Virus record (IMG/VR): IMGVR_UViG_3300046507_000773
Coordinates: 62,001 to 126,000 of that record
Direction: 5' to 3' (one strand)
Length of the DNA stretch: 64,000 nucleotides
A program made the position numbers and the translations under genes. How positions within the stretch are numbered: position 1 is the first letter of the stretch; each line of letters begins with the position of its first letter. Below are positions 63,070-64,000 of this stretch, piece by piece. The notes beneath the pieces are model-generated. The model saw only the letters and a program-made list of their open reading frames with translations. It was not told the DNA's origin and made no database searches.

Positions 63070-63214
63070 GTCAATCTGTGGTTTTTTAACAGAAGACTAA
63101 CAAAGCTATGTACAGAATCGATGAGCGCAGTCTGAGCCCATCAAAGCAATTACCGCGATTGCTCTTGCAGTAATCAGACAAACCAACCTCTTTAACAACC
63201 TGAAGGAAAAAGTA

Positions 63215-63736
63215 ATGGCAACCGCAACCGAAAAAGACGTCCTGAAAGCTGAAGCGAAAAAGACCTTCGACGACCTGTCGCCGGAAGTCAAGAAGACCGT
63301 CGAAGCTGCCCGCGGCTACGTCACCATCTCGAACGAAGGCACCCCGGCCGTCGACCCCGCCACCTACGAGCGCCTGCTGGAACTGAACAACTCGAGCAAG
63401 GAAGCCTACATCGGCGTCCAGGAAGCCAATGCCGTCATCTACCCGGCACTGGCCTACGTGTTCGGCGAAAAGGGCATCCCGGTCATGGCCGAGAACGCTG
63501 ACGTCAAGCAGATCACCGGCGTCGTCCCGTGCTTCGGCAAGGACACGATCTCGGTCGGCCTGAAGCGTTCGTCGCCGTACACCCTGCGCGATTCCGAAGG
63601 CACCGTCACCGGCACCGGCACGAGCTTCGGCACCATCAGCGTCGACCACAAGATCTACGCCACCAAGACCCGCGGCGAACTGGCCAAGGTGAAGAACCTG
63701 ATCGGCGAACTCGGCGCAGCTAGCCTGTCGTCGTAA
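63215..63736 (+). CDS. Hypothetical, probably highly expressed protein
   Basis: RBS AAGGA; extreme C/G-ending codon bias. Confidence 0.8.
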   Translation: MATATEKDVLKAEAKKTFDDLSPEVKKTVEAARGYVTISNEGTPAVDPATYERLLELNNSSKEAYIGVQEANAVIYPALAYVFGEKGIPVMAENADVKQITGVVPCFGKDTISVGLKRSSPYTLRDSEGTVTGTGTSFGTISVDHKIYATKTRGELAKVKNLIGELGAASLSS

Positions 63737-63741
63737 AGCAT

Positions 63742-64000
63742 CGGCGCGCGTCGCCGTAGGGAGCTAGCTTCCCCTGTAGCTGCTTGACGTCCGTGCCTTT
63801 GTGCGAGAGTGACGTGGCTGCTCAAATCTTGCCCCCATCGTGGAGCGTGTAAAAGTTAGGAAGCCGTCCGATGGCCGGTTCCCGTAAAGGAAGTTAGCTT
63901 CTCCTGATATCGCCAGCGCTTAGCCTTTGTGCGAAGAAGCGCTTGCGGGGCAAAGACCACAAGGTCAAAGTTAGGGTCTGGGTGACAACGCCCGGACCCG
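63742..64000 (+). ncRNA. Tandem repeat of structured multi-hairpin units (candidate ncRNA array), truncated by the window edge
   Basis: Two units start CCGTA at 63754 and 63882. They share TAGCTT, CCTG, GCCTTTGTGCGA, CAAA and AAAGTTAGG, while the stems differ in sequence yet still pair. Confidence 0.6.

What the first reader, a model, noticed from the sequence alone, without database searches (positions are those of the whole stretch)
63742..64000. Tandem array of structured RNA-like units with conserved linkers and co-varying stems at the window edge
Seen: right after the stop of the 63215 gene, non-coding DNA repeats a fixed order of short motifs: CCGTA (63754, 63882), GRAGYTAGCTTCYCCTG, GCCTTTGTGCGA (63795, 63923), CAAA, AAAGTTAGG (63852, 63967), and a GC hairpin ending CCCG (63881, 63997). 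The period is about 128 then about 116 nt. The segments between the motifs differ in sequence but keep base-pairing. Around the 12-mer the stem is ACGTC/GACGT in unit 1 and AGCGCTT/AAGCGCT in unit 2. The last hairpin is GGAAGCCG/CGGTTCC versus GGGTCTGGGTG/CGCCCGGACCC. After CAAA there is a variable hairpin (GACC-ACAA-GGTC in unit 2). YTAGCTT can pair locally (YUAG-loop hairpin) or with AAGTTAG to close a multi-way junction. Inference: conserved loops with compensatory stems point to selection on RNA structure, so this may be a processed array of ncRNAs. Possible roles include protein sponges/decoys, antitoxin- or guide-like RNAs, or templates for an enzyme encoded downstream. It is not a CRISPR array and matches no family I recognise. 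Only two full units are visible.
Basis: partly seen in the sequence, partly recalled or inferred. Interest (0 to 1): 0.85.

Follow-up and report, generated by a model that had tools for sequence, protein, structure and literature searches.

The report
Structured 3'UTR RNA of jumbo phage
Just after a very highly expressed late gene of an uncultured phiKZ-like giant phage lie two copies of a previously undescribed folded RNA module, kept in at least ten related phages, whose conserved loops probably dock an unknown factor that acts on this messenger RNA.

Summary
Window 63754-63999 carries two ~120-nt units with the same order of invariant motifs and different but complementary stems. It is not a growing array: the contig continues (L001) and shows exactly two units, then a T-run and the next gene's TATG promoter. 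The window is a phiKZ-like (chimallivirus) jumbo phage from rhizosphere metagenomes. The units lie on the coding strand directly after the stop codon of a conserved 173-aa gene, the most codon-biased ORF in the window, which has a TATG late promoter. They therefore most likely form the 3'UTR of a late monocistronic mRNA, though transcription was not shown. Homologous units (one; one full plus one short; or two) follow the orthologous gene in ten phage genomes whose proteins are only 40-80% identical, and are missing from more distant relatives. On a model-fitted alignment 94.6% of cells pair (75.7% after shuffling) and 18 of 27 pairs change on both sides. There is no Rfam, tRNA, CRISPR, type III antitoxin or retron match, and no reverse transcriptase or nuclease downstream. 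I read it as a new, clade-restricted structured RNA family. The function is inferred only: stems display invariant loop and linker sequences for a trans-acting factor.

The parts
63106..63112 (+). CTATGTA, a phiKZ-type late-promoter motif (TATG, with G 63110 as the likely transcription start) of the 173-aa gene. It marks the start of the transcript that would carry the RNA units.
   Evidence: Invariant in all 9 aligned 5' regions. TATG with G as the start site is the phiKZ nvRNAP late-promoter consensus (PMC4666361). Promoter use here is inferred.
63113..63214 (+). Conserved structured 5'UTR of the same gene. It has a hairpin with loop GUCUGA (63130-63135) complementary to UCAGAC (63174-63179), a CAAAG linker (63142-63146) between two hairpins, and the RBS AAGGAA.
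   Evidence: The loop/downstream pairing is kept by changes on both sides in L007 and L031 (CCUGA/UCAGG) and in L006 (GUCUA/UAGAC). This was read directly from the sequences and not tested statistically.
63215..63736 (+). 173-aa gene of a conserved chimallivirus protein family of unknown function. It has the strongest codon bias in the window.
   Evidence: phrog_9746. 627 representatives in the 50%-identity library. BFVD matches are uncharacterised proteins of phiKZ-like phages. GC3 is 0.85, the highest of 52 ORFs.
63743..63755 (+). GC clamp hairpin H0 (GGCG-CGCGT-CGCC) directly before GUA of unit 1.
   Evidence: An equivalent small GC hairpin precedes the first unit in every genome.
63754..63882 (+). 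Unit 1 (sub-type I). Linker GUA 63756-58. Hairpin A 63759-63772 (GGGAG-CUAG-CUUCC). Long hairpin P2 63776-63821 (GUAGCUGC...GUGGCUGC), capped by GCCUUUGUGCGA 63795-63806. Hairpin P3 63831-63846. Linker AAAGUUAGG 63852-63860. GC clamp hairpin H4 63859-63882.
   Evidence: Folds. Orthologous units are L005:1779-1909 and L006:2064-2193. Found by covariance model R1 only with filters off (23.9 bits).
63882..63999 (+). Unit 2 (sub-type II). Linker GUAAA 63884-88. Hairpin A 63889-63902 (GGAAG-UUAG-CUUCU). P2 63911-63947 (CGCCAGCGCUU...AAGCGCUUGCG), capped by GCCUUUGUGCGA 63923-63934. Linker GGGGCAAAG 63947-63955. P3 63955-63966 (GACC-ACAA-GGUC). Linker AAAGUUAGG 63967-63975. H4 63974-63999 (11 bp).
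   Evidence: RNAalifold on a plain MAFFT alignment recovers hairpin A, P2 with its cap, and H4. R1 scores 127 bits. Orthologues are L005:1908-2026 and L007:5536-5653.
64000..64000 (+). First base of GCCCC, which pairs with GGGGC (63947-63951) to close a Y-shaped structure. The rest lies beyond the window at L001:10786-10806: GCCCC, TATTTTTT, then ATGCC (terminator-like T-run overlapping the next TATG promoter). The next gene's ATG is at L001:10823.
   Evidence: The simple terminator scan does not call it, because the T-run starts 7 nt after H4.

Best explanation
The region is the 3' untranslated region of a late, very highly expressed, monocistronic phage mRNA. It is built from one or two copies of a modular structured RNA found only in one sub-clade of phiKZ-like jumbo phages. 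Each module of about 115-130 nt is a row of hairpins: a GC clamp, hairpin A, a long hairpin P2, a small hairpin P3 and another GC clamp. The stem sequences are free to change, but the loops and single-stranded linkers are almost invariant: GUA, the YUAG loop of hairpin A, the P2 cap GCCUUUGWGCGA, CAAAG and AAAGUUAGG. The inferred mechanism is that the stems only hold these invariant sequences in a fixed display, and that a sequence-specific trans-acting factor reads them. That factor is most likely an RNA-binding protein of the phage or host. It would control the stability, translation or location of this particular mRNA. Extra copies would simply add binding capacity, so they could also buffer or titrate the factor. 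In the window's phage, the last clamp plus a GGGGC/GCCCC helix and a T-run also end the transcript. What is shown: conservation, structure, strand, position relative to gene and promoter, and absence from known families. What is inferred: transcription as a 3'UTR, factor binding, and the cis-regulatory purpose.
For: Position and strand: the units start 17-20 nt after the stop codon, on the gene's strand. They end at a T-run and/or the TATG motif of the next gene in all genomes. TATG is the phiKZ late promoter, and CTATGTA is invariant about 105 nt upstream of the gene. G-U pairs occur in many stems, and the reverse complement folds less well in all four genomes tested.
Selection: the proteins are 40-80% identical and the CDS about 60% identical at nucleotide level for the distant relatives, yet the 16-, 12- and 9-nt motifs are nearly invariant.
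Structure: 94.6% of cells pair against 75.7% in shuffles and 43-56% in slid controls. 18 of 27 pairs change on both sides, and 0 of 500 shuffles reach this. An independent RNAalifold run recovers the same helices.
Specific linkage: in all 10 genomes the units follow this one gene. Model R1 finds no other copy in the 64-kb window or in about 130 kb of relatives.
High expression of the carrier gene is suggested by the top GC3 value.
A hairpin-CAAAG-hairpin arrangement also occurs in the conserved 5'UTR of the same mRNA.
Copy number of 1, 1.5 or 2, together with exchange of parts between units (the H4 of L006 unit 1 equals the H4 of window unit 2; the P3 of L006 unit 2 resembles that of window unit 2), fits a modular binding platform.
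Against: There is no transcript evidence: no RNA run could be listed. No binding factor is identified. The 173-aa protein has no recognisable RNA-binding fold: PDB Foldseek finds nothing significant, and the best VIA Z of 6.1 is to pilin-like folds, below the tool's noise level. The protein-RNA complex job was not folded. CAAAG is only 5 nt, so its recurrence in the 5'UTR could be chance. The covariation test used an alignment fitted to the structure, and the sequences are related. Hairpin A shows only one-sided changes within the main set. A purely trans-acting role would give the same sequence picture.
Confidence: 0.4

Rival explanations
1. The 3'UTR is cut, for example by RNase E in the single-stranded AAAG/UUAGG or GUA linkers. 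This would release stable hairpin-bounded RNAs of about 120 nt that act in trans as a sponge or decoy for a host or phage protein, or as base-pairing sRNAs through the invariant 12-mer loop.
For: Units are bounded by GC clamp hairpins, and copy number varies between 1 and 2. Riding on the most codon-biased gene would give high abundance. AG/UUA resembles the RNase E preference RN/WUU (established knowledge, not tested here). Conserved apical loops are typical seed or binding sites.
Against: No data show processing. No convincing target was found: complementarity of the 12-mer to the gene's own 5'UTR is significant in only one of nine genomes. Within the window the only sites complementary to the 12-mer need 2 mismatches, and the total match count is at chance level (7 matches against 7.7 expected). 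GGA motifs are not displayed in loops as in Csr/Rsm sponges. Strict linkage to one gene is not required for a trans-acting RNA.
Confidence: 0.25
2. A passive 3'-end protection and termination stack. A series of GC-rich hairpins blocks 3'-to-5' exonucleases and terminates the phage RNA polymerase, with no specific partner.
For: The hairpins are GC-rich. The last one is followed by a T-run in the window's phage and in L005, and separate hairpin-plus-T-run terminators follow in L006, L007, L028 and L029. Relatives without the motifs still have hairpin-rich 3' regions (RP31) or a plain terminator (FLC9) at this place.
Against: Simple protection does not need 37 or more invariant loop and linker nucleotides across phages whose proteins are 40% identical. 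Stems vary while unpaired parts are fixed, which is the opposite of what a pure stability element predicts.
Confidence: 0.12
3. A ligand-sensing riboswitch or attenuator, tandem in the window, that sets read-through from the 173-aa gene into the downstream genes.
For: The architecture is typical of aptamers: invariant junction and loop nucleotides with covarying stems. In the window and in L005, GGGGC can pair either with upstream CYCC or with GCCCC next to the T-run, giving an anti-terminator/terminator-like choice.
Against: The alternative pairing exists only in two genomes. L025, L031 and L035 have no T-run after the last hairpin. A TATG promoter lies between the units and the downstream gene, so the units are not its leader. 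There is no Rfam riboswitch match even at E up to 10.
Confidence: 0.07
4. A new self-cleaving ribozyme class that cuts at the clamp-GUA junction and so separates the units.
For: It is a small multi-helix RNA with an invariant core in loops and junctions. It occurs in tandem and is phage-associated, as with several small ribozyme classes. NUH-type GUA sits at each unit boundary.
Against: There is no match to any known ribozyme model. The GUA linker is AUA in L031. Nothing tested here bears on catalysis.
Confidence: 0.04
5. An anti-defence RNA: a pseudo-antitoxin like pseudo-ToxI, or a decoy for a host RNA-targeting nuclease.
For: It is a tandem structured RNA before a terminator. Copy number of 1, 1.5 or 2 recalls pseudo-ToxI expansion in phage PhiTE (recalled knowledge, not tested).
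Against: Units are three times longer than type III antitoxin repeats and are not identical to each other. No ToxN, AbiQ, CptN or TenpN-like or any PADLOC protein is nearby. The host is unknown, so no cognate system can be named.
Confidence: 0.04
6. A DNA-level element (operator, recombination or packaging site), a minus-strand coding region, or chance similarity after a tandem duplication.
For: AGCTAGCT is a DNA palindrome. A 56-aa minus-strand ORF (63655-63825) overlaps unit 1.
Against: The C-to-T variant AGTTAGCT breaks the DNA palindrome but keeps an RNA G-U pair. Many stems hold G-U pairs that would be C-A on the other strand. The stems change with compensation. The minus-strand ORF is short and starts with TTG, and the element's length and stem sequences differ widely between genomes. 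Conservation across ten genomes excludes chance.
Confidence: 0.03

Closest known systems
Conserved UTR-embedded sRNA of giant Pseudomonas phages (201phi2-1 sRNA005 / phiKZ sRNA upstream of gp182; PMC11512511)
   Same: A short structured RNA inside the untranslated part of a late or structural gene transcript of phiKZ-like phages. It is conserved by position relative to a homologous gene across genera, and its function is unknown.
   Different: That RNA is 5'UTR-derived through premature termination, is a single copy, and sits upstream of a tail gene. The present units are 3' of a different gene, are modular (1-2 copies), have different motifs, and were found in only one uncultured sub-clade. 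No sequence relation was seen.
Csr/Rsm-type protein-sponge sRNAs (CsrB, RsmY, RsmZ)
   Same: A row of hairpins with repeated short conserved motifs. Variable copy number of the repeated module fits multivalent protein binding.
   Different: The defining GGA or ANGGA motifs in hairpin loops are not present. GGRAG lies in a stem, and the second purine-rich site is often GGG or GGU. Those sRNAs are stand-alone genes, not 3'UTRs. There is no Rfam match.
Type III toxin-antitoxin antitoxin arrays (ToxI, CptI, TenpI) and phage pseudo-ToxI
   Same: Tandem structured RNA units followed by a terminator and a downstream gene. Copy number differs between related phages.
   Different: Antitoxin repeats are 34-45 nt and near-identical. 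Here the units are about 120 nt and of two diverged sub-types. No ToxN-like endoribonuclease gene follows.
Intergenic RNase III processing hairpins of phage T7 (established knowledge)
   Same: Conserved structured elements between late genes that end up at mRNA 3' ends and stabilise them.
   Different: T7 has about ten such sites across the genome, each a single hairpin with an internal loop. Here there is one locus per genome, made of multi-hairpin modules with invariant unpaired sequences.
Tandem riboswitch aptamers (for example glycine)
   Same: Two adjacent copies of one fold, with an invariant core, covarying stems and a terminator-like end.
   Different: They lie in 5' leaders, whereas this element follows a stop codon and precedes a promoter. 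Most relatives have one copy and some have no terminator. No known aptamer model matches.

Membership tests
Any Rfam 15 family | Covariance-model score at or above the family's gathering threshold | tested here: not met
   There were 0 hits at gathering score in the window and in L001. At E up to 10 on 63600-64000 the only hit is an unrelated minus-strand match of 9.6 bits. At E up to 5 on eight homologous loci nothing falls in the element.
tRNA / tmRNA / tRNA-like | Cloverleaf recognised by ARAGORN | tested here: not met
   0 genes in the window, L001, L005, L006 and L007.
CRISPR array | Three or more near-identical direct repeats of 23-50 nt separated by unique spacers of similar length | tested here: not met
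   TRF finds no repeat in the region. There are only two units. The conserved pieces are 9-16 nt and dispersed, and no cas gene was seen among the neighbours that were scanned.
Type III TA antitoxin array (ToxI-like) | Near-identical tandem repeats of about 34-45 nt | tested here: not met
   Units are 118-129 nt and differ in all stems.
Type III TA antitoxin array (ToxI-like) | ToxN, AbiQ, CptN or TenpN-type endoribonuclease gene directly downstream of the terminator | tested here: not met
   The downstream 105-aa, 110-aa and 386-aa proteins have no Pfam or PADLOC hit. The 105-aa protein belongs to phrog_17597, of unknown function.
Retron msr/msd or other RT-templated RNA | Adjacent reverse transcriptase gene | tested here: not met
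   There is no RT domain in 10 kb downstream or in the upstream genes that were scanned.
Riboswitch | Invariant core with covarying helices | tested here: met
Riboswitch | Lies in the leader of the regulated gene, with an expression platform conserved across members | tested here: not met
   The element follows a stop codon. A TATG promoter motif separates it from the next gene. The terminator-like end is present only in some genomes.
Riboswitch | Specific ligand binding | not testable with these tools
   Needs in-line probing or ITC.
Csr/Rsm sponge sRNA | Multiple GGA motifs presented in hairpin loops or single strands | tested here: not met
   Loops are YUAG, the 12-mer and variable tetraloops. 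GGRAG is in the stem of hairpin A.
Intrinsic terminator | GC-rich hairpin immediately followed by a T-run | tested here: inconclusive
   In the window's phage the T-run starts 7 nt after H4, and 0-2 nt after it only if the GGGGC/GCCCC helix forms. The simple scan does not call it. Other genomes have a separate hairpin plus T-run, and three have none.
3'UTR element of a phiKZ-type late mRNA | Same strand as the upstream gene, between its stop codon and the next TATG promoter, with a TATG promoter upstream of the gene | tested here: met
   Strand is given by the G-U pairs and folding energies.
3'UTR element of a phiKZ-type late mRNA | Transcribed as part of that mRNA | not testable with these tools
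   No RNA run was listed.

The most novel reading that the evidence does not exclude
The module is a new functional RNA class with an activity of its own: a ligand-sensing aptamer, a self-cleaving ribozyme, or an RNA decoy that disarms a host RNA-targeting defence. It would work together with the equally conserved pseudoknot-like 5'UTR of the same mRNA, as a dedicated RNA control system of nucleus-forming jumbo phages.
Probability: 0.15. Interest if true: 0.8.

Novelty: new member of a known kind. Interest (0 to 1): 0.55.

Why it matters
RNA-level regulation in nucleus-forming jumbo phages is almost unexplored. Their mRNAs must leave the phage nucleus, survive host RNases and be translated at very different levels, yet only a handful of phage sRNAs are known and none has a mechanism. 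This finding is a covariation-supported RNA family with clear invariant recognition sequences. It is attached to one conserved and apparently very highly expressed late gene, which also has a conserved structured 5'UTR. That gives a concrete handle for finding the factor that reads such signals, whether for export, stability, translation or counter-defence. The limits are that the phages are uncultured, the family is small (ten genomes), and no function has been shown.

Tried and rejected
- DNA-pattern scans of viral, metagenome and genome collections returned only the window's own contig plus chance hits: L012, L013, L015/L019, L017, L020-L023 and L039/L040. L014/L016/L018 share only TAGCTTCCCC...GCCTTTGTGCGA and score 9 bits with R1.
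- Megablast, blastn and tblastn against the phage records found no homologue of the element or of the 173-aa protein.
- R1 gave one false positive, a CDS end plus terminator at L007:786-903.
- The arm-swap energy test for P2 was not discriminating, because GC-rich arms pair with non-cognate arms nearly as well. I rely on the column-wise counts instead.
- Pairing of the 12-mer with the gene's own 5'UTR gives 12 bp in L035 (p=0.006), but p is 0.12-0.94 in the others. It is not claimed.
- The pseudoknot between the 12-mer cap and CAAAGUUAG is suggested by RNAalifold for four units and by a 7-bp variant in L031. It is not better than shuffled controls and is absent in sub-type I. It is left open.
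- The fold of the 173-aa protein gave no significant PDB match. The weak dsRBD and coat-protein hits have probability below 0.15, and the pilin-like Z of 6 is within noise.
- Both RNA-seq searches listed no RNA run, and read laying was therefore not used.

Full report
**What the sequence shows**

The 63215 gene ends with TAA at 63734-63736. A small GC hairpin (63743-63755) follows, then two units at 63754-63882 and 63882-63999. Both units carry the same ordered motifs:
- CCGUA
- GGRAGYUAGCUUCYCC
- GCCUUUGUGCGA
- a CAAA-type linker
- AAAGUUAGG
- a GC hairpin

The 12-mer and the 9-mer occur exactly twice in 64 kb, only here, and so does the 16-mer. Tandem Repeats Finder sees no repeat. The units are therefore not copies in the usual sense. 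They share unpaired motifs but differ in every stem.

**Beyond the window edge**

The 173-aa protein led to the contig itself, IMGVR_UViG_3300046507_000773 (226,810 bp; the window is positions 62001-126000). Its continuation (L001) shows that the array stops at two units. After unit 2 come GCCCC, TATTTTTT, ATGCC and the next gene (ATG at L001:10823). GGGGC (63947-63951) can pair with that GCCCC, which places a Y-shaped structure directly before the T-run.

**Genome context**

The window encodes a phiKZ-type virion RNA polymerase beta subunit and a Peptidase_S80 prohead protease. The nearest named relatives are Ralstonia phages RP12/RP31 and Burkholderia phage FLC9, at about 52% protease identity. 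DNA runs holding the locus are rhizosphere metagenomes.

The 173-aa gene belongs to a large family of uncharacterised chimallivirus proteins:
- 627 representatives in the 50%-identity library
- BFVD structural matches to proteins of KTN4, PhiEaH1, Eowyn, Phabio, Noxifer and Psa21
- no significant PDB fold match

It has the highest GC3 (0.85) of 52 ORFs in the window, which suggests very high expression.

An invariant CTATGTA lies about 105 nt upstream of its ATG in all nine genomes aligned. T(T)ATGCC follows the RNA units in nearly all of them; L028 and L029 have TTTTATGCT and TTTTATGAC instead. TATG, with G as the start site, is the late-promoter consensus of the phiKZ non-virion RNA polymerase (PMC4666361). 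On this reading the units lie between the stop codon of a late gene and the next late promoter. They would then be the 3'UTR of a roughly 0.9-kb monocistronic mRNA. This is inferred, not shown.

**Homologues**

Protein searches and contig look-ups gave ten distinct orthologues at 40-100% identity. In every one the element starts right after the stop codon.

| Locus | Units found |
|---|---|
| Window | two full units |
| L005 | two full units |
| L006 | one full unit plus one short unit without P2 |
| L031 | one short unit plus one full unit |
| L007, L025/L026, L028, L029, L035 | one unit each |
| L034 | the start of one unit, at a contig end |

More distant relatives lack the element: RP31, FLC9, L033, L036 and L037, with protein identity of about 22-35% where it was measured. 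The orthologous CDS is only about 60% identical at nucleotide level for the distant members, whereas the RNA motifs are almost invariant.

Parts have been exchanged between units. The terminal hairpin of L006 unit 1 is that of window unit 2, and the P3 of L006 unit 2 resembles that of window unit 2.

**Structure**

Single-sequence folds give the same plan in most units: clamp hairpin, GUA, hairpin A (GGRAG-YUAG-CUUCY), P2 capped by the 12-mer, P3, the single-stranded (C)AAAGUUAG linker, and a clamp hairpin.

RNAalifold on a plain MAFFT alignment of three units recovers hairpin A, P2 with its cap, and H4.

I built covariance model R1 from those three units with this structure. R1 finds every unit in the ten loci searched. 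It finds nothing else in the window or in the relatives apart from one false positive.

Counts on its alignment of 11 units:

| Measure | Result |
|---|---|
| Cells forming standard pairs | 94.6% |
| Same, after shuffling | 75.7% |
| Same, in slid controls | 43-56% |
| Pairs changed on both sides | 18 of 27 |
| Shuffles reaching the observed value | 0 of 500 |

The alignment is fitted to the model and the sequences are related, so this is strong support but not proof.

P2 arms have unrelated sequences in different units: GUAGCUGC/GUGGCUGC, GCAUCCG/CGGAUGC, AGCGCUU/AAGCGCU, GCUCCG/CGGAGC and GCCCC/GGGGC. P3 has at least eight different hairpin sequences at the same place.

Hairpin A shows only one-sided changes in the main set. 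The divergent units keep a local hairpin while the loop changes: L031 has GGGAG-CUCA-CUUCC and GGGAG-CAGC-CUCUC, and L034 has its own variant.

Many G-U pairs, and weaker folding of the reverse complement, place the RNA on the + strand.

**Known families**

| Family or feature | Result |
|---|---|
| Rfam | no match, even at permissive thresholds, in the window or eight homologous loci |
| tRNA / tmRNA | none |
| CRISPR-like repeats | none |
| Reverse transcriptase, nuclease, ToxN-like or PADLOC protein among neighbours | none |

Downstream genes are two small paralogues (phrog_17597), a small membrane-like protein, a 386-aa unknown protein, DHFR and, on the other strand, the tail sheath.

**Mechanism**

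The data show a conserved fold whose stems are free to vary and whose unpaired sequences are fixed. It is tied to one gene and present in one to two copies. That pattern calls for sequence-specific recognition by a conserved partner.

I favour a protein-binding 3'UTR module acting on this mRNA (stability, translation or localisation). Extra copies would add capacity. Three points support this:
- The linkage to the gene is absolute.
- The same mRNA also has a conserved structured 5'UTR with a covarying loop/downstream helix (GUCUGA 63130-63135 with UCAGAC 63174-63179; variants CCUGA/UCAGG and GUCUA/UAGAC).
- That 5'UTR has the same hairpin-CAAAG-hairpin arrangement.

My confidence in this specific mechanism is about 0.4. 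The general statement, that this is a real, new, conserved structured RNA on the + strand, I hold at about 0.9.

The rivals are a processed trans-acting sRNA or sponge, passive 3'-end protection, a riboswitch or attenuator, a ribozyme, an anti-defence decoy, and a DNA-level element.

**What led nowhere**

- No RNA-seq run could be listed.
- The protein-RNA complex job was not folded.
- The arm-swap energy test was not discriminating.
- 12-mer to 5'UTR complementarity is significant in only one genome.
- A cap-to-linker pseudoknot is suggested but is not above shuffled controls.
- Collection scans with DNA patterns gave only chance hits.

**Verdict**

This is a new, clade-restricted structured RNA family in the 3'UTR of a late jumbo-phage gene. 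It is not a long array and is not linked to an enzyme gene. Its function is still to be shown.

Noticed in passing
window 63106-63214: The 5'UTR of the 173-aa gene is conserved in all nine genomes. It has an invariant CTATGTA (late-promoter TATG) and a hairpin whose loop GUCUGA (63130-63135) is complementary to UCAGAC (63174-63179). That pairing is kept by changes on both sides in other genomes (CCUGA/UCAGG, GUCUA/UAGAC). A CAAAG linker sits between two hairpins. This looks like a second conserved RNA structure, possibly a pseudoknot, on the same mRNA.
   Followed up: partly
window 63215-63736: The 173-aa gene has the highest third-position GC (0.85, with C3 0.57) of 52 ORFs of at least 100 aa in the window. 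This suggests it is among the most highly expressed genes. Its protein family is widespread in phiKZ-like phages, but its fold matches nothing solved.
   Followed up: partly
L001:11493-11514 (about 700 nt beyond the window end): The terminator after the 110-aa gene is a hairpin GAAGGGAG-UUAGCG-CUCCCUUC plus T7. It re-uses the GGGAGUUAGC sequence of hairpin A. It was seen only in the window's own phage.
   Followed up: no
L033:3508-3841, L036:3505-3920, L037:3412-3760: Relatives whose orthologue is only about 31-35% identical lack the units. At the same place they carry a 59-60-aa ORF followed by a different non-coding stretch of about 150 nt (...CGCGAGCAAC...GCAGCGTTTTATG) that is conserved among the three contigs. 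It may be another RNA element.
   Followed up: no
L003:9630-9864 (Ralstonia phage RP31): The 235-nt region after the distant homologue ORF031 is rich in hairpins and ends with a terminator and TTATGCC. It contains none of the motifs and is not hit by the covariance model.
   Followed up: partly
L016:150-310, L018:5200-5330 (also L014, L022): An unrelated 216-229 kb phage contig from peat metagenomes, also binned in a Bathyarchaeia MAG, holds a tRNA-like sequence (GGGTCCGTAGCTCAGCC...GGTTCAAATCCCTCCGGACCCGCCA) interrupted by about 60 nt that ARAGORN does not call. It may be an intron-containing tRNA. Its upstream match to two of the motifs is chance (9 bits with R1).
   Followed up: partly
L001:10823-11140 and L001:12746-13144: The 105-aa gene directly after the units and a 132-aa gene 1.6 kb further on are paralogues. 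Both match the C-terminal part of phrog_17597, which has unknown function.
   Followed up: no
L036:5840-6250: A 136-aa gene in a related 218-kb phage contig has a weak precomputed hit to Acb2_Tad1_hairpin, an anti-CBASS/anti-Thoeris sponge fold.
   Followed up: no
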